IMG/VR virus record: IMGVR_UViG_3300042367_000228
Coordinates: 308,017 to 372,016 of that record
Reading direction: 5' to 3' (one strand)
DNA length: 64,000 nt
The number at the start of each line of letters is the position of its first letter. Positions within the stretch are counted from its first letter, which is position 1. Shown here one piece after another: positions 25,379-64,000 of this stretch. Below the pieces are notes generated by a model. That model saw only the letters and a list, made by a program, of their open reading frames with translations. It ran no database searches and was not told the origin of the DNA. Position numbers and translations under genes: made by a program.

Positions 25379-26160
25379 ATATGTTTGCAGTTATCAAAAT
25401 GATATCGTTTCATATTTGTAGATCCTTCTTTTCCGCAATGAGGACATATTATTTTTGGTTTATGTTGTTTAGCATAACTCATTTTTGCTTTTGTGTCAGC
25501 CGACATGTTTTGTTTAGAAAGGCGCATTTTTTCTATAGAAGATGCTGAATGAGTTTTGCCTTTGTGTGCGGCACTAATTTTAGCCTTGTGATCGTCTGAT
25601 TTAGGTCTTCCTTTTCCTGCTATACTTAGTTTAGCTTTAGTTTCAGCTGAAAGAGGTTTACCTTTATTAGGTGACGTCCTGCCTTTAGAAGCGACGCTTA
25701 GTTTAGCTTTAGTTTCATCTGAGACAGGTTTACGCGGTTTAGTTGAAACTCTGCCTTTTCCTGCTATACTTAGTTTAGCTTTGGTTTCAGCTGAAAGAGG
25801 AATACCTTTTTTGCGTGACGGCCGGCCTTTACTAGCCTGACTTATCTTTTTTCGGGTTTCAGCTGATGGAGATCGTTCTCTCATTGCAGCTGCATGATTT
25901 CGTTTAAGCCAACTATATAACTTATTATTACGATATTTTCCAGATGACATTCGATGGGCTGCAAATAGCAATTTATGATTATCTGGATAGATTTTTACAA
26001 GCAGTTGATGTGCTACATAATGAGCTTCAGGAGTTAGACGTACTAAGTTACTTGGTTCATTAGAACCGCCCATACATCGCGGAATAATGTGATGCTTTTC
26101 TGTGTAATCTGCAATCATATCTTTTGCAGTGAGTTGTTCGTATATTTTTTGGTAATTCAT
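25375..26160 (-). CDS. HNH homing endonuclease with NUMOD3 repeats
   Basis: EKHHIIPRCMGG...NLV.LT...H..AH; SAETKAKLS repeats; C-terminal CPHC..HF.NC. Confidence 0.9.
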   Translation of the reverse strand: MNYQKIYEQLTAKDMIADYTEKHHIIPRCMGGSNEPSNLVRLTPEAHYVAHQLLVKIYPDNHKLLFAAHRMSSGKYRNNKLYSWLKRNHAAAMRERSPSAETRKKISQASKGRPSRKKGIPLSAETKAKLSIAGKGRVSTKPRKPVSDETKAKLSVASKGRTSPNKGKPLSAETKAKLSIAGKGRPKSDDHKAKISAAHKGKTHSASSIEKMRLSKQNMSADTKAKMSYAKQHKPKIICPHCGKEGSTNMKRYHFDNCKHI

Positions 26161-37955: not shown

Positions 37956-38675
37956 TTAGGGTTTGCGTTTACAGTTATCAAAATGGTATCGTTTCATATT
38001 TCCACCTCTTCCTATTTTATTACAGTAAGGGCAGGTTAATTCAATTTTTTGTTTTCCCTTCATTGCGGCACTTATGTTAGCTTTATGATTAGCTGATTTA
38101 AGTATACCAGTTTTAGCAGAACTTATGTTAGATTTATGATTATCTGAAAGTTGTTTACCATTATGCGCAGACCGCATCTTAGATTTAGTTTCCTCTGAAT
38201 GTCTTTTTCCTGTATTAGTAACACTTAATTTAGCTCGTGTTTTGGATGAAACAACTCTTCCTGTATTTGTAGAACTTAGCTTAGTCCGCATACTATCTGG
38301 CATACTTTTACCTTTGTTAGGCGACGGCCTTCCTGTAAGAGATGCACTTATTTTAGCCTTATGTTCATCTGATATAGTTTTTCCTTTATTAGCAATACTG
38401 GCTGCTATAGAAAACTTTCGTCTAAGCCATCCATACAATTTATTTGTAATTCTACAATTACCCATCATATTAGCCGCATACACTAATTTATGATTATGTG
38501 GGTAGATTTTTACAAGTAGCTGATGTGCTACATAATGAGCCTCGGGAGTTAATAATACTAAGTTACTTGGATTGTTAGAACCGCCCATACAACGAGGAAT
38601 TATGTGATGCTTTTCTGTATAGTCTGCAATCATATCTTTTGCAGTTAATTGTTCATATATCTTTTGATAGTTCAT
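37956..38675 (-). CDS. HNH homing endonuclease with NUMOD3 repeats
   Basis: N-terminal ~60 aa nearly identical to 25375-26160; S.E.K.K.S repeats; CPYC..HFDNC. Confidence 0.9.
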   Translation of the reverse strand: MNYQKIYEQLTAKDMIADYTEKHHIIPRCMGGSNNPSNLVLLTPEAHYVAHQLLVKIYPHNHKLVYAANMMGNCRITNKLYGWLRRKFSIAASIANKGKTISDEHKAKISASLTGRPSPNKGKSMPDSMRTKLSSTNTGRVVSSKTRAKLSVTNTGKRHSEETKSKMRSAHNGKQLSDNHKSNISSAKTGILKSANHKANISAAMKGKQKIELTCPYCNKIGRGGNMKRYHFDNCKRKP

Positions 38676-56025: not shown

Positions 56026-56241
56026 ATGTACAAGTTACAAATTACTACCACTAGCAACAACATCGTTACTATCTACTTTAACACTAACATCACAGTGTCG
56101 GAGTATAAAAATAGAAACACAGGAATTATGGAAACTTCAGTACAAGATGGACGTCACAACAACGGCGGCTGGACAACACTTGAGAGCGCAGAGAGCATTG
56201 TGGCGCGTATTGATGCGTTGATTGCTGAAGGCAAGCGGTAA
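56026..56241 (+). CDS. hypothetical protein
   Basis: promoter cassette. Confidence 0.6.
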   Translation: MYKLQITTTSNNIVTIYFNTNITVSEYKNRNTGIMETSVQDGRHNNGGWTTLESAESIVARIDALIAEGKR

Positions 56242-56351
56242 ACAAAGTGCTTGCTAATTTGTTTTGTTGCTGTATAATATGCAACAAGTTAGCAAGCAAG
56301 CTAATTTAACTAAGCAGTACAATTTAACTTTACTATTTCGGAGCGTACAAC

Positions 56352-57978: not shown

Positions 57979-58173
57979 ATGCAAAAACAACTATATATCC
58001 CAAGTGCCGCACGTATTGCTTACATTAACACGCTTACACGCCGTTTGCGTACACAAGCCAAAAACTCTAAATCGTTTCTCGAAACAAACAATGCAATCAA
58101 CAAGTTCTATGTAGAGGAACTTGAAGCTGCGGACGCAGTAGCGCGTGGCGAATATGTAGAACACGCAGGATAA
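57979..58173 (+). CDS. hypothetical protein
   Basis: promoter + hairpin leader. Confidence 0.6.
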   Translation: MQKQLYIPSAARIAYINTLTRRLRTQAKNSKSFLETNNAINKFYVEELEAADAVARGEYVEHAG

Positions 58174-58272
58174 AAACTGCTTGCTAACTTGTACATAGTT
58201 TGCTATAATATGTGCAAGTTAGCAATGTTGCTAACTGTTACAAAACTTTATATAACTTTCGGAGCGTATCGT

Positions 58273-59624: not shown

Positions 59625-59676
59625 GAACAGTATTATAACCGGCATTCCGGATAGACCCCGCTGTATATGTGTGTAC

Positions 59677-59755
59677 CGGCATTCCGGTCCGTGGTTGAAT
59701 CAGTTAATCGGCATTCCGGTCCGTGGTTGAATCAGTTAATCGGCATTCCGGTCCA
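59677..59755 (+). repeat. 32-bp tandem repeat (2 copies + partial)
   Basis: CGGCATTCCGGTCCGTGGTTGAATCAGTTAAT at 59677 and 59709, partial at 59741. Confidence 0.9.
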
Positions 59756-59897
59756 GGGACAATTCCATATGCATCACCGGCATATCGCATACGTGATCAC
59801 ACGGATATAAACTTGTAAAATAAATTTGCATTGTTTGTTGTTTACTGTATAATAAGCATTGTAGCAATATTGCTACGTTAACTTAAAAGTGTATATT

Positions 59898-60248
59898 ATG
59901 CAAACATTAAACACAGCAACAAAAAACGCAATTAACACAACAACAGCTAACACAAGCAAAGTGCCCGGAATGTATCCGAGCAACACGAGTATACTGGCAC
60001 TATTGGCGGACGCTGGGTTTGCCGAAGAGTGGAGCACAACGACACATCCGACGCACGTGGTATTAAAGATAGCAGCGATATACAACGAGCATAAGGCAGC
60101 AGTTGAGGACATTTGGAATAACGATGCTGCAATGGATGCGTGTATAGCGGAAGTTGAGGAGCATGCGGACTTAGTGGACTACATAAACTACACGGCACTG
60201 CAGGACGCAGTGTTTGTGTACGATTGCTTATGCTGCAGCGGACTATAG
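59898..60248 (+). CDS. hypothetical protein
   Basis: promoter + hairpin; SD-less leader. Confidence 0.65.
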   Translation: MQTLNTATKNAINTTTANTSKVPGMYPSNTSILALLADAGFAEEWSTTTHPTHVVLKIAAIYNEHKAAVEDIWNNDAAMDACIAEVEEHADLVDYINYTALQDAVFVYDCLCCSGL

Positions 60249-60309
60249 AGTAACACGAAGCACACGGACGTGCAAACAAACTAACTTAATGATAATTTGG
60301 AGCGTAAAG

Positions 60310-60483
60310 ATGAAAACGGTACAAGAATATACAGCAGTATTGAGCGCAAGACTAATTGATACACGAAGCCGTAGACAAGCCGAACGCACACGGGATGCCA
60401 TACTACGCGAACGCCGCGAGAATAAAGAAACAATGAAGTATGCGGACTTTGTGGCGCTTAGAGCTAGCGCGTTAGTAGACTAA
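60310..60483 (+). CDS. small basic protein
   Basis: GGAGCG RBS. Confidence 0.55.
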   Translation: MKTVQEYTAVLSARLIDTRSRRQAERTRDAILRERRENKETMKYADFVALRASALVD

Positions 60484-60497
60484 TTGGAGAGCGAACA

Positions 60498-60704
60498 ATG
60501 ACTACGCTATTTGTTTTGAAAGTTATGATGTTTATTGGCGCACAGGAAATTGAGAACACATTCATATATCCAACTGAAGCGGAGTGCCAACAACACCGGG
60601 CGATGGAAGTACAGCTACTAGACAGACTGAACGAAACGGTACTAACAGGGTACGCGACACGATGCGATGTGGCAAAGGACAGTGATATGGTTAACACGAA
60701 GTAG
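60498..60704 (+). CDS. hypothetical protein
   Basis: GGAG RBS; Y.T.AEC....C motif. Confidence 0.6.
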   Translation: MTTLFVLKVMMFIGAQEIENTFIYPTEAECQQHRAMEVQLLDRLNETVLTGYATRCDVAKDSDMVNTK

Positions 60705-60717
60705 TGATTTGTGAACT

Positions 60718-60743
60718 AACGGGCACTTCGGTGCTCGTTTTTT
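60718..60743 (+). terminator. intrinsic terminator
   Basis: AACGGGCAC-TTCG-GTGCTCGTT + T-tract. Confidence 0.85.
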
Positions 60744-60962
60744 ATGGCATGTCATTATTCGACATATCGGTCTCGGGACACAATCGATATATCGGTACAG
60801 ACATAGCATCGGCATTCCGGTTTCTCGATATATCGGTCCTTCGGCGGCTGCGGATCCATGGATATAAACTTGTAAAATAAATTTGCATTTTGTTTTTACT
60901 ATGCTATACTATGTGCAAGTTAGCAATAACGCTAACTGTTAACTTAACTATAGTACACTACA

Positions 60963-61148
60963 ATGCAAAATACTAAACAACAACAAGTTACACGTTTTTT
61001 AAACAAACAAGCGCAAGCACACAAACAACAATACAGCACTGCGGCACAAACGGGCTTTATGGATCACGTAGTAACAGCTTTGGAGTTTATGATTGTTGCG
61101 GTTCCGTTTGCTATTGCAATAGTTGGATTTTGCGGTGCATTTAATTAA
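60963..61148 (+). CDS. small membrane protein
   Basis: promoter + hairpin; C-terminal TM helix. Confidence 0.6.
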   Translation: MQNTKQQQVTRFLNKQAQAHKQQYSTAAQTGFMDHVVTALEFMIVAVPFAIAIVGFCGAFN

Positions 61149-61667
61149 TAAAAAACGCTTGCAATTTAAAATAACAAGCGTATAATATAAAGCGTGTTAA
61201 GCAATAACGTTTAACACGCGCTTTTTAACAATTTAACTATAGTGTGTATATTATGCAAACAATAACAGCTACGTGCAAACAAGCACAAAAAAACAGTAAT
61301 AACGCAATGCAACAAGCAATGCTGCAAGTGCTTAATGCTTATGTTGCAACAAACAAAGTAACAGCAACAAAGCAAAAACACGCTAAAAAAGTAACTTACA
61401 CAGCAAATAAAAACTATGTTTTATGCTATGTAACACGCGCTTTTGTTGCAAATATTTGTTTTGCAAGTGCTAACAGTGTAAGTTATACGCTAACACTTGC
61501 GCAAAATGCTAACTTAACGCAAGCAAATATTAACAATGCTTACATTAAGTGTGTAACTAAAAAAACGTTTAACAAGTATGTTAACAAAGTTAAAAACACT
61601 GTAATTAACTAAGCAATAAATAATGCAAGCACTTTTTACAGTGCTTGCATTTTAACACTACAAATAG
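61136..61667. other. GR-free island (no GA, GG, TC, CC)
   Basis: line-by-line inspection of ~530 bp. Confidence 0.9.
61253..61612 (+). CDS. 119-aa protein lacking D, E, G, P and W, inside GR-free island
   Basis: promoter 61159-61186, hairpin leader, stem-loop after stop. Confidence 0.6.
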   Translation: MQTITATCKQAQKNSNNAMQQAMLQVLNAYVATNKVTATKQKHAKKVTYTANKNYVLCYVTRAFVANICFASANSVSYTLTLAQNANLTQANINNAYIKCVTKKTFNKYVNKVKNTVIN

Positions 61668-62789
61668 GAGTAACGACAATGGCAAGACGATCAGACCGAG
61701 CAACTACAGCAAACAAAAAAGCAGTTCGTCGAGTACTAAGACGTAACAAGAAGTAGTAAATAGGCCCCGCTGTAGCATTACATGATATTGAAACGTATGG
61801 CACACATTGACCCCGCTGTACGGATACCTTAACTAACATTTCTATCTACCATACCTAATACACACGCTCCACTTAACCCTGTATGTGCCGCATAACACAT
61901 ATGGGGTTTCCTTTTGATCGATCCATCAAACATAACGGCATTCCGGTCATTGGAGACTCTTGGAGGTTTGGTATTCGATAAACTAACTATACTTGACTAT
62001 TCGAAATGCCATATGCTATAATACCCCGCTGTAACATAGCACGTTTTAGTATATGCGTGTAACACTTACACAATATTAAAACAATATATGTAAAATTTAC
62101 GTTTTAACGCATGTACACAGCACGTTTATACACTAAGCAATACAGCTATAGCACTATACACAATAAAACAGCTTACACGCAAATTTTGCGCTAGTTAGTA
62201 TGGATTGTATGATATTCCATATAGAGGAATCACCATGCTATATCAATACCCCGCTGTAAGGTTACACGGTTAAACACATACTTGCATTTTATACGTTTAC
62301 TTGCTATAATATATTTTTTTAACTTACTTACTATAACAACAATGCTAACACAAAAATTATATATGTATAACATGTCCAGCGCAACCAAATTGCGTGTAAT
62401 GATGACACACGGTGATGCAGCCGCTAGACTAATCACAAAGGTTAAACGAGTTAAAGGATATCAGGCCCCGCTGTAGGATCGTGTGGGCAGGCTAGGATTG
62501 AACAGGCATCTGGTTAGGTGCCTGATACACACAAACTATGCAACCGGAATGCCGATAGCTTTTATTATATCTAAACCGATATGTCGATGAAGGTACAGTG
62601 GAACGGATTGGTAGGTGCATGGATGGTATTAGAATGGAACGATTTGACATCGAATGGTTGACATCGGTACCGGCCGTTATGGTGTATACGATTACGGTAC
62701 GAATTAAGTGTGTGTTTTATTATGCACTGTTTTGGTGCTATAAAACAAAATAAAAAAGTGCAACCCTTTCGAGTTGCACTCATTTGGTG

Positions 62790-62975
62790 CTATCTGTAAA
62801 TTAAAGGCATTGATAACACGCTAATACGTTCGCCATTACGCATTAAAAGAATGCGCCCACCTGTTTTGTCATTGTCTAACACTCGCACAATATTACGCGC
62901 GTCAATGTCTACAATCTCTTGGCACTCATTTGGTGCAATGGTGTCAAATAACCCGTTATTTAATAATACTTTCAT
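62790..62975 (-). CDS. hypothetical protein
   Basis: AAGGA RBS on - strand. Confidence 0.55.
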   Translation of the reverse strand: MKVLLNNGLFDTIAPNECQEIVDIDARNIVRVLDNDKTGGRILLMRNGERISVLSMPLIYR

Positions 62976-63041
62976 GTTTTAAATTCCTTAAATGAGTTAA
63001 AAAAGTGCATCATCTTATTGATGATGCACTATTGTGAAGCG

Positions 63042-63473
63042 TTAGCCGAAAATACCGTCTTTTTCTACAATATCCAAGTCTACCAATTCGCCTTCACTTT
63101 GTGCAATCGCTGATTGACTATGTGAGTTAATGAATGTATTTAGTGCATTCAAGTGATTTTCAGTAAACCCGTTGATTCTTTTTTGTGCATCGCAAATATC
63201 TTTGTATTCGTCATAGTTATTGCGTAAAAATAGTGCCGCTGTCAATTCAGATACAGCACGGTTTAATTGCACCATGAACACTTCAGAATGTGCATGAACA
63301 CCACTTTCTTTCACCTTATTTAAGTGCAACCAACGTGCTTTACAAGTTAAACCGTCGCCCGAAAAACGTGCTTTGTAGCCTAGACGATGATGCAAGCTAA
63401 CACCCACACCTTGCACTACTTTTGCGCCATTGCCGAAAGTGTTTGTTGTTGTTTGTTGTGCAAAATTTGACAT
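63042..63473 (-). CDS. hypothetical protein
   Basis: 143 aa; AGGTG RBS; divergent from GR-free region. Confidence 0.65.
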   Translation of the reverse strand: MSNFAQQTTTNTFGNGAKVVQGVGVSLHHRLGYKARFSGDGLTCKARWLHLNKVKESGVHAHSEVFMVQLNRAVSELTAALFLRNNYDEYKDICDAQKRINGFTENHLNALNTFINSHSQSAIAQSEGELVDLDIVEKDGIFG

Positions 63474-63481
63474 AATATCAC

Positions 63482-64000
63482 CTATTTAAAGTATGTTATG
63501 CGCTTTTTTTGTGCATACTTAATGCACAATAAATGCGCGTTAAAAGTAAAGTAAAAATAAATTGTTAAAAAGCTAACTTAAAAATGCGTTTTTTTATGCG
63601 CTTGTTTTTTTAAGTTGTGCATAGTTTACAGCATATAAAAAAAAAGTAAAATTTAATTGCAATTTATTTTTACAATTTAGCACTAAAAATGCGCATTTTT
63701 AAAAAAAGTGTATAAAAAACAATAACTTATAATTTAAAAATAATTTTATTTAATGCGCATTTTTTGCGCATAATGCGCATTTATAGCGTTTTTAATGCGC
63801 ATTTTTAGTGCTATATATTGCAAGCGCATAGCAAGCGCATAGCAAGCGCATAGCACAGGCCCCGCTGTTAGCGCATAGCAAGCGCATAGCATAGCAAGCG
63901 CATAGCATAGCAAGCGCATAGCATAGCAAGCGCATAGCATAGCAAGCGCATAGCATAGCAAGCGCATAGCATAGCAAGCGCATAGCATAGCAAGCGCATA
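63482..64000. other. GR-free non-coding island broken only by the GGCCCC motif
   Basis: no GA/GG/TC/CC in 63482-63857 and 63864-64000. Confidence 0.9.
63820..64000. repeat. GCAAGCGCATA / 16-bp tandem repeat running off the window end
   Basis: 3 x 11-bp units, then 8 copies at 16-bp period (GCAAGCGCATA-GCATA). Confidence 0.95.

What the first reader, a model, noticed from the sequence alone, without database searches (positions are those of the whole stretch)
63482..64000. GR-free A/T-tract region and GCATA/GCAAGC tandem repeat with one embedded polar motif: likely terminus or origin
Seen: 376 bp plus 137 bp without GA/GG/TC/CC, repeated (AA)TGCGCA(TT) palindromes and long A/T tracts, then 11 copies of GCAAGCGCATA (11- then 16-bp period); the only GR bases are GGCCCC at 63858-63863. 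Transcription diverges here (- strand genes at 62790-63473). Inference: a modification-free protein-binding platform at a genome end, terminal repeat or origin.
Basis: partly seen in the sequence, partly recalled or inferred. Interest (0 to 1): 0.65.

Follow-up and report, generated by a model that had tools for sequence, protein, structure and literature searches.

The report
Repeat-rich junction in a jumbo phage
The "genome end" is only where the assembler cut a circular 372-kb lake-water jumbo phage genome inside a variable short tandem repeat, but the repeat lies in a real and unusual non-coding stretch that lacks four dinucleotides entirely and looks like a protein-binding control or replication-start site.

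Summary
Window 63482-63857 and 63864-64000 contain no GA, GG, TC or CC (4 such dinucleotides in 519 bp, against 87 +/- 7 expected). There are 11 GCAAGCGCATA units (3 at 11-bp spacing, 8 at 16-bp spacing), and GGCCCC is the only interruption.

The "genome end" reading does not hold. The window is the last 64 kb of a 372,016-bp IMG/VR phage record, and that record's 128-bp "direct terminal repeat" is exactly the 8 x 16-bp array. Six other assemblies of the same phage cross the array inside contigs, with 7, 8 or 9 copies. Relatives carry 10-21 mixed 11/16-bp units. The array is therefore a real hypervariable minisatellite, and the record end is an assembly cut.

In the circle the region is a roughly 1-kb non-coding junction. 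It lies between the + strand early-gene arm and the - strand primase/helicase arm, and it is the most AT-rich place in the genome.

The GA/GG/TC/CC-free property is shared with six nearby early-promoter islands and with relatives. PA5oct, the closest named relative, is reported to carry modified G at GA/GG.

The embedded motif is the last of 22 strand-specific intergenic signals. The function (origin or operator platform, or repeat-boundary element) is inferred, not shown.

The parts
62790..62975 (-). 61-aa ORF, second gene of the short minus-strand pair left of the region
   Evidence: ORF list. It was called as a gene in all related contigs. No PHROG match.
63042..63473 (-). 143-aa conserved hypothetical protein. 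Its start codon abuts the GA/GG/TC/CC-free region.
   Evidence: 9 homologs at 55-100% identity, none annotated, plus a 106-aa homolog in relative G001. No Pfam or PHROG family. AlphaFold2 model has pLDDT 83 but no PDB fold match: Foldseek E > 0.6, VIA Z <= 3.6.
63482..63857 (.). 376-bp non-coding spacer with no GA/GG/TC/CC and long A/T tracts. It overlaps the most AT-rich window of the whole 372-kb genome.
   Evidence: 0-4 such dinucleotides against 87 expected. (rank 1 in AT content at 100-300 bp windows). Relatives have the same property over 300-690 bp.
63625..63652 (+). Best sigma-70-like promoter match in the spacer (TTTACA-16-TAAAAT, 10 of 12), pointing toward the arrays and partly conserved in relatives
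   Evidence: where the overall promoter count was not above shuffles, so this is weak. Conservation was seen by eye.
63688..63803 (.). Cluster of four AATGCGCATT palindromes (63688, 63752, 63772, 63794). The fullest copy is an 18-bp perfect palindrome, TAAAAATGCGCATTTTTA. An extra TGCGCA lies at 63765.
   Evidence: 4 of 5 genome copies are here. Relatives L243 and L244 have TTGCGCAA palindromes instead.
63820..63852 (+). Three tandem 11-bp units, GCAAGCGCATA
63856..63868 (+). Polar motif CAGGCCCCGCTGT. It is the last of 22 genome copies of A.AGGCCCCGCTGTA, all on the + strand, all intergenic, all within genome 320,295-371,876. It is the only GG/CC-bearing stretch in the region.
   Evidence: It is conserved at orthologous sites in relative G001 and present in a 259-kb phage contig. 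It is absent from the arrays of relatives L238-L240.
63873..64000 (+). Eight perfect tandem 16-bp units, GCATAGCAAGCGCATA. This stretch is identical to contig positions 1-128, so it is the record's so-called direct terminal repeat.
   Evidence: There are 7, 8 or 9 copies in other assemblies of the same phage.

Best explanation
What it is (shown). The region is the left two thirds of a roughly 1-kb non-coding junction, made of window 63474-64000 followed by contig 129-587. The genome is a circularly assembled 372-kb freshwater jumbo phage whose closest named relative is Pseudomonas phage PA5oct. The junction separates the + strand early-gene arm from the - strand arm that begins with a T7-kinase-like gene, a DnaB-type helicase and a Toprim primase. 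The record's ends, and its 128-bp "terminal repeat", are only the place where the assembler cut the circle inside a hypervariable minisatellite of 11-bp and 16-bp units.

How it most likely works (inferred). It is a cis-acting protein-binding platform. One sequence-specific binder would read the GCGCAT half-site, as dimers on the AATGCGCATT palindromes and as a row of monomers on the direct repeats. These sites lie next to the most easily melted, most AT-rich DNA of the genome. That is the layout of an iteron-type or transcription-activated replication origin, or of its control region. In this lineage a phage-specific promoter-like motif fires through the array.

Why the dinucleotides are absent (inferred). 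The total absence of GA/GG/TC/CC keeps this DNA, like the neighbouring sigma-70-type early-promoter islands, free of the G modification that phages of this group appear to place at GA/GG. Host and early phage proteins could then read it on the incoming genome.

The confidence given applies to the functional reading. The structural part (internal junction, assembly cut, real variable repeat) I hold at about 0.9.
For: Structure (shown).
- The window is G000:C1:308017-372016, and contig 1-128 equals the array.
- L008 matches the de-duplicated circle at 100% over 12.8 kb.
- The array has 7, 8 or 9 copies inside contigs from six samples, and a second full-length contig also ends in the array.
- Relative G001 (372,173 bp, collinear, about 75% nucleotide identity) has the homologous junction at 54-55 kb of its contig.
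- Flanking genes are the helicase, the primase and a kinase-like gene.

Platform (supports the inference).
- 4 of the genome's 5 AATGCGCATT copies and 12 direct GCGCATA half-sites lie here.
- In L243 both the palindrome and the repeat unit change to GCGCAA.
- It is the top AT-rich window of the genome.
- It sits at a strand switch.
- T4 oriE has evenly spaced direct repeats, and T4 origins lie at strand switches and use nearby promoters (PMC3016281).

Dinucleotide-free property.
- All the long runs cluster in the last 8 kb of the record. Six of them hold TTGCWW-17-TATAAT promoters, and the canonical TTGACA, which contains GA, is never used.
- The same clustering occurs in G001, L068 and, more weakly, PA5oct.
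- PA5oct is reported to carry modified G at GA and/or GG, with QueE and PTPS genes (10.1101/2025.03.31.646159).
- G000 encodes FolE, QueD and a radical-SAM QueE-like protein.
Against: - No initiator or DNA-binding fold was recognised. The adjacent 143-aa protein has no family and no structural match.
- The array is absent from G001 and varies from 7 to 21 units among close strains. That fits a neutral slippage product as well as a functional site.
- Sharing of the half-site between palindromes and repeats could arise because the array expanded from the local sequence.
- DnaA boxes are not convincingly enriched.
- GC skew follows gene orientation and gives no replication signal.
- No DpdA or QueC was found in this genome by Pfam TGT, DUF6610 or CAjan DpdA searches.
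- The dPreQ0 phage CAjan has no motif-free islands.
- No modification data exist for this phage.
Confidence: 0.4

Rival explanations
1. The region marks the inner boundary of a long direct terminal repeat, and so one physical end of virion DNA. Alternatively it is a T5-like injection-stop region closing the early-gene arm. Under this reading, the roughly 52-kb arm that carries the polar motif (genome 320-372 kb) would be duplicated at both ends of the packaged genome, as in PA5oct.
For: - PA5oct has a 39,080-bp terminal repeat full of early genes (PMC7318152).
- The PA5oct repeat's inner boundary lies in a 594-bp non-coding stretch with a 12-bp x 3 tandem repeat 30 bp away.
- The large-terminase N-terminal part of this phage is closest to PA5oct, at 55.8% identity.
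- T5's untranslated Repeat Region 3, full of direct and inverted repeats and palindromes, straddles its terminal-repeat boundary at the end of the pre-early genes (10.1101/866236).
- In two lake samples, contig depth is higher on the early side than on the helicase side: about 6 against 3.3 in X15, and 39-50 against 12 in X9.
Against: - No read-level data were available. All runs were k=31 contigs, which cannot show read starts or local depth.
- The ratio of 3-4 in X9 and the variant letters at the depth step point to mixtures of strains that share the early arm, not to a twofold repeat.
- In PA5oct the boundary region is not free of GA/GG/TC/CC, and small + strand genes continue beyond it.
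- Nothing special was seen at the other presumed boundary near genome 319-320 kb.
- A long repeat would assemble as a circle either way, so the assemblies say nothing on this point.
Confidence: 0.2
2. It is an ordinary divergent promoter and operator region. The palindromes would be operators of a phage regulator controlling the minus-strand 143-aa/61-aa genes and the plus-strand 72-aa gene. The tandem array would be a neutral slippage product with no role of its own.
For: - Genes diverge locally: minus-strand genes end at 63473, and a conserved 72-aa plus-strand gene with a GGAG ribosome-binding site starts at contig 588.
- The 18-bp perfect palindromes are spaced 20-22 bp apart, as operators often are.
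- In G001 a consensus TTGCAA-16-TATAAT promoter for the minus-strand gene lies in the equivalent spacer.
- The array is missing in G001 and is hypervariable elsewhere.
- The polar motif followed by a long leader could simply drive the 72-aa gene.
Against: - Sigma-70-like matches in the region are not above shuffled expectation.
- About 1 kb of non-coding DNA, and a dinucleotide-free stretch of up to 690 bp, is far more than two small genes need.
- An array of the same style (short unit, or short unit plus a 5-bp insert) is kept in at least four diverged lineages even where the unit sequence has changed.
Confidence: 0.25
3. The absence of GA/GG/TC/CC has nothing to do with self-modification. 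It could reflect avoidance of host nucleases or CRISPR PAMs on the first DNA to enter the cell, or the footprint of a cytosine deaminase specific for C after a pyrimidine, acting on both strands of heavily transcribed DNA.
For: - The depletion is symmetric on both strands, which points to a double-stranded-DNA-level or two-strand process.
- The islands coincide with the strongest early promoters.
- No DpdA was detected.
- CAjan, which is modified at GA/GGC, has no such islands.
- Many common methylase and restriction sites (GATC, GANTC, CCWGG, GGCC) and the NGG, CC and TTC PAMs cannot occur in such DNA (general knowledge).
Against: - Depletion is absolute over 377-690 bp and is kept in lineages with only 75% nucleotide identity, and in an intact 119-aa ORF. 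This indicates selection, not mutation.
- Many restriction sites (for example TGCGCA, AGCT, GTAC) and the AAG PAM remain possible and are present.
- The islands are interspersed with ordinary DNA, so they cannot protect the molecule as a whole.
Confidence: 0.15

Closest known systems
Bacteriophage T4 oriE (and oriF/oriG) replication origins
   Same: T4 oriE has a cluster of evenly spaced short direct repeats (12 nt) and depends on a nearby promoter. T4 origins lie where transcription switches strand, and oriF/oriG use a promoter plus an unwinding region (PMC3016281). Here there are 11/16-bp direct repeats, a promoter-like motif, the most AT-rich DNA of the genome and a strand switch next to primase/helicase genes.
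   Different: No homolog of RepEA/RepEB or of any other initiator was recognised. The repeat number is hypervariable, and the array is missing in a 75%-identical relative. Even in T4 the iterons have no proven role. The dinucleotide-free composition has no T4 counterpart.
T5 injection-stop / Repeat Region 3 at the left-terminal-repeat boundary
   Same: Both are untranslated regions of about 1-1.7 kb crowded with direct repeats (9 copies of DRD in T5), inverted repeats and palindromes. Both are placed at the end of the block of first-expressed genes (10.1101/866236).
   Different: T5's region is highly conserved in order among T5-like phages and carries 8 DnaA boxes. Here the array is hypervariable, and only one exact DnaA-box match lies nearby. 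Whether this phage has a long terminal repeat or two-step injection is unknown.
Pseudomonas phage PA5oct (Wroclawvirus, Arenbergviridae)
   Same: It is the closest named relative: helicase 54.5% and large terminase 55.8% amino-acid identity. It is a jumbo myovirus that uses host RNA polymerase with TTGAC/TATAATA promoters, and it has a long terminal repeat full of early genes. It is reported to carry modified G at GA and/or GG. It has GA/GG/TC/CC-free runs of 141-217 bp at early promoters and inside small early genes.
   Different: Gene order around the helicase differs. The GGCCCCGCTGT motif was not found in the 107 kb examined. Its dinucleotide-free runs are much shorter. No equivalent GCGCAT array was seen.
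Iteron plasmid origins with an inverted-repeat operator (R6K, pPS10, F, P1 type)
   Same: The logic is similar: the same half-site is used in direct repeats (where initiator monomers bind at the origin) and in an inverted repeat next to a small gene (where dimers bind for autoregulation), beside an AT-rich region. This comparison is from general knowledge; see also PMC4980987, listed.
   Different: The units are 11/16 bp instead of 17-22 bp. No winged-helix Rep protein was found. This is a lytic jumbo phage, not a plasmid.

Membership tests
Physical genome terminus / direct terminal repeat of virion DNA | Identical unique sequence at both ends of the packaged molecule | tested here: not met
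   The 128-bp end identity consists wholly of the 8 x 16-bp tandem array. It is what a circle cut inside a repeat produces.
Physical genome terminus / direct terminal repeat of virion DNA | Sequence is not contiguous across the ends in independent assemblies | tested here: not met
   Six assemblies of the same phage, and relative G001, run through the junction inside contigs. This is also what a long repeat or concatemer would give, so it excludes only a simple unique end.
Physical genome terminus / direct terminal repeat of virion DNA | Read-start pile-ups and twofold coverage of the repeat | tested here: inconclusive
   Only k=31 contigs were available. The early side is deeper in X15 (about 1.8x) and X9 (3-4x), but several strains are mixed in those samples.
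Iteron-type replication origin | Three or more direct repeats at regular, helix-related spacing | tested here: met
   3 x 11 bp, then 8 x 16 bp; relatives have 10-21 units of 11/16 bp.
Iteron-type replication origin | Adjacent AT-rich unwinding region | tested here: met
   Genome 371,468-371,770 is the most AT-rich window at 100-300 bp. It is not the single least stable 100-bp window by nearest-neighbour energy.
Iteron-type replication origin | A cognate initiator protein that binds the repeats | tested here: inconclusive
   The neighbouring 143-aa protein has no family or fold match. Binding is not testable here.
Iteron-type replication origin | Replication demonstrably starts there | not testable with these tools
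   GC skew tracks transcription only. There is no infection time course.
T5-type injection-stop / repeat-boundary region | Long untranslated region with many direct and inverted repeats and palindromes at the end of the first-expressed genes | tested here: met
   comparison with 10.1101/866236.
T5-type injection-stop / repeat-boundary region | Ordered set of DnaA boxes, conserved among relatives | tested here: not met
   There is one exact TTWTNCACA match, inside the 143-aa gene. The one-mismatch matches are explained by AT richness and the repeats.
7-deazaguanine DNA modification system (DpdA pathway) | Biosynthesis genes FolE, QueD, QueE | tested here: met
   FolE lies at 153,375-153,911, a radical-SAM protein of 280 aa at about 151.0-151.9 kb, and QueD at 192,916-193,437. 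The QueE assignment rests only on the radical-SAM domain, which just reaches the Pfam cut-off.
7-deazaguanine DNA modification system (DpdA pathway) | DpdA transglycosylase (signature protein) | tested here: not met
   No match to Pfam TGT, DUF6610 (DpdA4) or CAjan DpdA. DpdA3-type proteins could not be searched for.
7-deazaguanine DNA modification system (DpdA pathway) | Modified G in GA/GG context on virion DNA | not testable with these tools
   This is reported only for the relative PA5oct, from restriction digests.
Variable-number tandem repeat (minisatellite) | Copy number and unit order differ among closely related genomes | tested here: met
   7, 8 and 9 copies in one strain; 10, 12 and 21 mixed units in the next. 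Array k-mer depth is about 4-16 times the flank depth in different samples.

The most novel reading that the evidence does not exclude
Jumbo phages of this PA5oct-related group would build deliberate "modification-free windows" into a G-hypermodified genome. These are stretches of 100-700 bp from which every GA/GG (and TC/CC) has been purged. They cover the sigma-70-type early promoters with their leaders, one whole 119-aa gene that lacks Asp, Glu, Gly and Pro, and this repeat-bearing junction. Host RNA polymerase and sequence-specific binders, such as an origin or boundary factor, could then read the incoming DNA. The junction would be the largest such window and the phage's origin or entry-control site.
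Probability: 0.3. Interest if true: 0.8.

Novelty: new variant of a known kind. Interest (0 to 1): 0.55.

Why it matters
A repeat-rich, non-coding junction between early and replication genes is a familiar kind of phage element; T4 oriE and the T5 injection-stop region are examples.

What is unusual is the composition. Two of the ten dinucleotide steps are completely excluded over hundreds of bases. This is conserved across diverged relatives and shared with the strongest early promoters and with one entire protein-coding gene. I found no mention of motif-free islands in the two papers on 7-deazaguanine-modified phages that I searched.

If the excluded steps are the targets of the phage's own G modification, these islands would show that hypermodified phages must leave parts of their DNA readable. 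That would give a purely sequence-based way to predict modification motifs, early promoters and cis-acting sites in uncultured jumbo phages.

There is also a practical lesson for catalogues: a "direct terminal repeat" made entirely of a tandem array shows that the assembly overlaps itself, not where the genome ends.

Tried and rejected
- **Near-identity search.** A megablast of the last 6 kb against GenBank phages found nothing.
- **Flanking small proteins.** PHROGs and Pfam gave no hit for the 143-, 61-, 72-, 119/122-, 116- and 61-aa proteins.
- **143-aa protein.** The structure model is confident, but it has no match in PDB by Foldseek or by VIA-align wide search. I therefore make no claim that it binds DNA. 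My impression of an AP2-like motif was not supported.
- **RNA families.** Rfam found no family in 21 kb around the junction. The only tRNAs in the window are far away.
- **Promoter and terminator scan.** Counts in the junction are not above shuffled expectation.
- **DnaA boxes.** No convincing enrichment.
- **GC skew.** It follows gene orientation only.
- **Reads.** All 24 runs that hold the sequence are kept as k=31 contigs. These break at the array and cannot show termini, true depth or copy number. The depth ratios are only suggestive.
- **Helicase-anchored comparison of 80 related loci.** Gene order downstream of the helicase varies. Only the same phage and L068 show dinucleotide-free windows there.
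- **GR-free genes compared.** The GA/GG/TC/CC-free genes of this phage and of L068 show no detectable sequence similarity.
- **Exact-pattern scan for the polar motif.** The scan of IMG/VR gave mostly single chance hits. Only G001, L131 and the same phage were informative.
- **CAjan control.** No motif-free islands, so such islands are not a general property of 7-deazaguanine phages.
- **DpdA and QueC searches.** Negative.
- **Assembly collapse.** I considered that 128 bp and 144 bp might be minimal traversals for k=127 or k=141. I rejected this because a 7-copy (112-bp) version and aperiodic 11/16-bp mixes are also assembled.
Full report
**Where the window lies.** The window is the last 64 kb (positions 308,017-372,016) of a single 372,016-bp IMG/VR virus record with 35.6% G+C. 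IMG/VR classes the record as having "direct terminal repeats". Its first 128 bases equal its last 128, and both consist of exactly eight copies of the 16-bp unit GCATAGCAAGCGCATA. The record is a jumbo phage from lake water; 24 runs from 24 studies, dated 2016-2024, hold it. Its closest named relatives are the Pseudomonas phage PA5oct group, with DnaB-type helicase at 54.5% and the large-terminase N-terminal part at 55.8% amino-acid identity. Next come Atu_ph07, Phosso and the Rak2/GAP32 group.

**The observation.**
- No GA, GG, TC or CC occurs in 63482-63857 or in 63864-64000. GGCCCC at 63858-63863 is the only exception.
- The 519 bp carry 4 such dinucleotides, against 87 +/- 6.7 in composition-matched shuffles.
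- The part before the repeats carries none, against 38.7 +/- 4.4.
- Control dinucleotide sets give longest runs of only 38-63 bp.
- Other intergenic gaps of this genome have a median density of 0.157.
- There are three 11-bp GCAAGCGCATA units, then the motif, then eight 16-bp units, making 11 copies of the 11-mer in all.
- AATGCGCATT occurs four times here and only once elsewhere in 372 kb.

**The "end" is an assembly cut.**
- I joined the record's end to its start, counting the 128 bp once. A 47.6-kb contig from another sample (L008) matches that circle at 100% identity over 12.8 kb, with eight units.
- Contigs from five further samples cross the array internally with 7, 8, 8, 9 and 9 units and are otherwise identical.
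- A second full-length contig (372,031 bp) again ends in the array.
- The array is therefore real, variable in copy number, and the favoured breaking point for assemblers.
- It is neither a collapse artefact nor evidence of a physical end.
- A related phage, G001 (372,173 bp, collinear, about 75% nucleotide identity), is cut elsewhere and carries the homologous junction at 54-55 kb of its contig.

**Anatomy of the junction in the circle.**
- To the left lies a roughly 52-kb arm of mostly + strand genes. It ends with a cluster of small early-type cassettes, followed by two small - strand genes of 61 and 143 aa.
- Then comes about 1 kb without genes: the A/T-tract spacer with palindromes, the 11-mers, the polar motif and the 16-mers.
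- On the other side of the record ends there are a further 182 bp free of GA/GG/TC/CC. They include four GTTGTAAAAAAACAAC repeats that form hairpin-capable inverted repeats.
- After those come a G7 run, two copies of a 45-nt element and a conserved 72-aa + strand gene with a GGAG ribosome-binding site.
- Beyond a bidirectional terminator the - strand arm begins with a T7-kinase-like fragment, a 589-aa protein, the DnaB-type helicase, a Toprim primase and a further helicase.
- The spacer is the most AT-rich window of the whole genome at 100, 150, 200 and 300 bp.

**Comparison with relatives.**
- Strains whose 143-aa protein is 73% identical (L238-L240) have the same layout, but their arrays are aperiodic mixtures of 11- and 16-bp units: 12, 10 and 21 units in three samples.
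- Those arrays have no polar motif inside and an uninterrupted GA/GG/TC/CC-free run of 559-690 bp.
- In those strains the G7 run is replaced by GGCCGGCCGGC.
- More distant strains (55-71% identity) have contigs that stop in such arrays.
- One strain (L244) uses another unit, GCAAGCACA with or without a GCACA insert, together with TTGCGCAA palindromes.
- Another strain (L243) uses GCGCAA in both the palindromes and the repeat units.
- G001 has no array and no TGCGCA palindromes. It keeps a 295-bp dinucleotide-free AT-rich spacer with other perfect palindromes, a G-rich block (GAGGGGTGGGGGG) and the 72-aa gene.
- L068 (47% G+C) has the same order, with a nearly GA/GG/TC/CC-free 191-aa gene, a G-rich block and a 10-bp tandem repeat.
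- Conserved features are therefore the position, the dinucleotide-free AT-rich composition, a G/C block and the 72-aa gene.
- The array style is kept within a subclade, while its sequence and length evolve fast.

**The polar motif.**
- A.AGGCCCCGCTGTA occurs 22 times in the genome. All copies are on the + strand, all lie between genome 320,295 and 371,876, and essentially all are between genes. They often sit 15-40 nt before a ribosome-binding site.
- No other position up- or downstream is conserved.
- G001 has 16 copies, all on the + strand and several at orthologous sites whose flanks have diverged.
- A 259-kb phage contig has four copies in a row.
- The 107 kb of PA5oct examined has none.
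- I read the motif as a gene-expression signal of the early or middle arm, either a phage-specific promoter or an RNA-processing site.
- A strand-specific nick site is less likely, given the strict intergenic placement.
- The copy in the array is the last of the series and is specific to this lineage.
- It would send transcription through the 16-mers, the A/T-rich DNA and the G run toward the 72-aa gene.

**The missing dinucleotides are a regional trait.**
- The five longest GA/GG/TC/CC-free runs of the genome (160-533 bp) all lie in the last 4.2 kb of the record. The longest anywhere else is 108 bp.
- Six islands contain a near-consensus TTGC(A/T)(A/T)-17-TATAAT promoter on the + strand plus roughly the first 100 transcribed bases. 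The canonical -35 hexamer TTGACA, which contains GA, is never used. These leaders also lack a purine-rich ribosome-binding site.
- One island covers a whole 119-aa ORF (61253-61612) with its promoter and terminator. The protein has no Asp, Glu, Gly, Pro or Trp and is 97-99% identical in strains where the neighbouring 143-aa protein is only 73% identical.
- G001 shows the same clustering at the homologous place.
- PA5oct has runs of 141-217 bp at tandem TTGCAA-17-TATAAT promoters before its tRNA cluster and inside small early genes, but none in 29 kb of its structural and replication genes.
- Depletion on both strands argues for a constraint on duplex DNA.

**A possible cause of the depletion.**
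- A 2025 preprint reports that PA5oct DNA resists enzymes in a way that suggests a modified G in GA and/or GG. It also reports that PA5oct encodes QueE and PTPS and is targeted by nucleases that sense hypermodified DNA (10.1101/2025.03.31.646159).
- Phages are known with dPreQ0 at GA and GGC (PMC7544227) or strictly at GA (PMC10484667).
- The present genome encodes FolE, QueD and a radical-SAM protein that may be QueE.
- I found no QueC and no DpdA with Pfam TGT, DUF6610 or CAjan DpdA.
- According to 10.1101/2023.04.13.536721, DpdA is the signature protein of this pathway.
- CAjan itself has no such islands.
- "Modification-free window" is therefore the best available reading of the composition, but it is an inference from a relative.

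**Function.** The half-site GCGCAT occurs as inverted pairs next to the small - strand genes and as 12 direct copies at 11- or 16-bp spacing, beside the genome's most AT-rich DNA. The site lies at a strand switch next to primase and helicase genes, and a promoter-like signal is aimed through it. This resembles iteron origins with an inverted-repeat operator. It also resembles T4 origins: oriE has evenly spaced direct repeats and depends on an early promoter, and oriE, oriF and oriG lie at strand switches (PMC3016281). I therefore favour an origin or origin-control platform, with only moderate confidence.

**Two rivals for the function.**
- The region could be the inner boundary of a long terminal repeat, or an injection-stop region. 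PA5oct has a 39-kb repeat of early genes whose boundary lies in non-coding DNA beside a 12-bp tandem repeat. T5's repeat-crowded untranslated region straddles its terminal-repeat boundary (10.1101/866236). Contig depth is higher on the early side in two samples, though strain mixtures explain this at least in part.
- It could be a plain divergent promoter and operator region with a neutral minisatellite.

None of the three could be tested decisively. The sequencing runs that hold this phage are available only as k=31 contigs, which break at the array.

**Verdict.**
- "Genome end / terminal repeat" as read from the record is an assembly effect.
- "Origin" and "modification-free platform" remain plausible but unproven.
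- The most interesting result is wider than the finding: a conserved family of GA/GG/TC/CC-free islands covering early promoters, one whole gene and this junction, in a group of jumbo phages that probably hypermodify G.

Noticed in passing
window 12275-63868 (22 sites; genome 320,295-371,876): The 14-nt motif A.AGGCCCCGCTGTA occurs only on the + strand, only between genes and only in the last 52 kb of the record. It is conserved at orthologous sites in a 75%-identical relative and in a 259-kb phage contig. It is probably a phage-specific promoter or an RNA-processing signal.
   Followed up: partly
window 56238-56338, 58170-58259, 59805-59964, 60862-61043, 61135-61667, 62269-62375: Six further GA/GG/TC/CC-free islands each hold a near-consensus TTGC(A/T)(A/T)-17-TATAAT promoter on the + strand. 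Each also covers about 100 nt of leader without a purine-rich ribosome-binding site. The GA-containing TTGACA hexamer is never used.
   Followed up: partly
window 61253-61612 (+): A 119-aa ORF lies wholly inside a 533-bp GA/GG/TC/CC-free run. Its protein has no Asp, Glu, Gly, Pro or Trp and is rich in Asn, Ala, Thr, Lys and Val. It is 97-99% identical in strains whose neighbouring genes are about 73% identical. It has no family match.
   Followed up: partly
window 62027-62202: A 176-bp GA/GG/TC/CC-free stretch with no ORF lies directly downstream of a polar motif. It may be a small non-coding RNA. It has no Rfam match.
   Followed up: partly
window 59641-62555, including the tandem repeat at 59677-59754: The motif CGGCATTCCGG occurs 10 times in the genome (7 on the + strand, 3 on the - strand), clustered just upstream of the early promoter cassettes. 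This includes a perfect 32-bp x 2.4 tandem repeat. It is probably a regulator binding site.
   Followed up: no
L004 (contig start) 235-345 and 311-330: Four GTTGTAAAAAAACAAC repeats form hairpin-capable inverted repeats and are followed by a G7 run. The G/C block is kept but rewritten in relatives: GGCCGGCCGGC, GAGGGGTGGGGGG or GAGGGGCGGGGGG, each before ATAGT or TGTATA.
   Followed up: partly
L004 425-545: There are two copies of a 45-nt element (TTTTTTGCGCAAAA...GGACCC....CGGGC) upstream of the conserved 72-aa gene. One copy is present in G001 and in L068.
   Followed up: no
G000:C1:151,000-155,000 (L228, L229): The FolE gene and the radical-SAM (QueE-like) gene are separated and flanked by HNH and GIY-YIG homing-endonuclease-like genes. 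QueD lies 40 kb away, next to a UvdE-type endonuclease gene.
   Followed up: partly
G000:C1:21,439-25,047 (L245): The large terminase seems to be in pieces. A 324-aa ORF carries the N-terminal ATPase domain and is followed by separate ORFs of 264 and 216 aa. This may reflect an intron or homing-endonuclease insertion, as annotated for Atu_ph07.
   Followed up: no
L008 13,946-14,063 (about contig 550-670) in runs X9 and X15: Contig depth steps from about 12 to about 50 (X9), with a cluster of variant letters at the start of the 72-aa gene. Loose ends show a different G-run. Several strains appear to share the early arm and junction but differ in the replication arm, so this is a recombination boundary.
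   Followed up: partly
window 25624-25836 and 38070-38187: Two imperfect tandem repeats (72 bp x 3 and 51 bp x 2.3) share the core TTAGCTGAAAGA. They were not examined.
   Followed up: no
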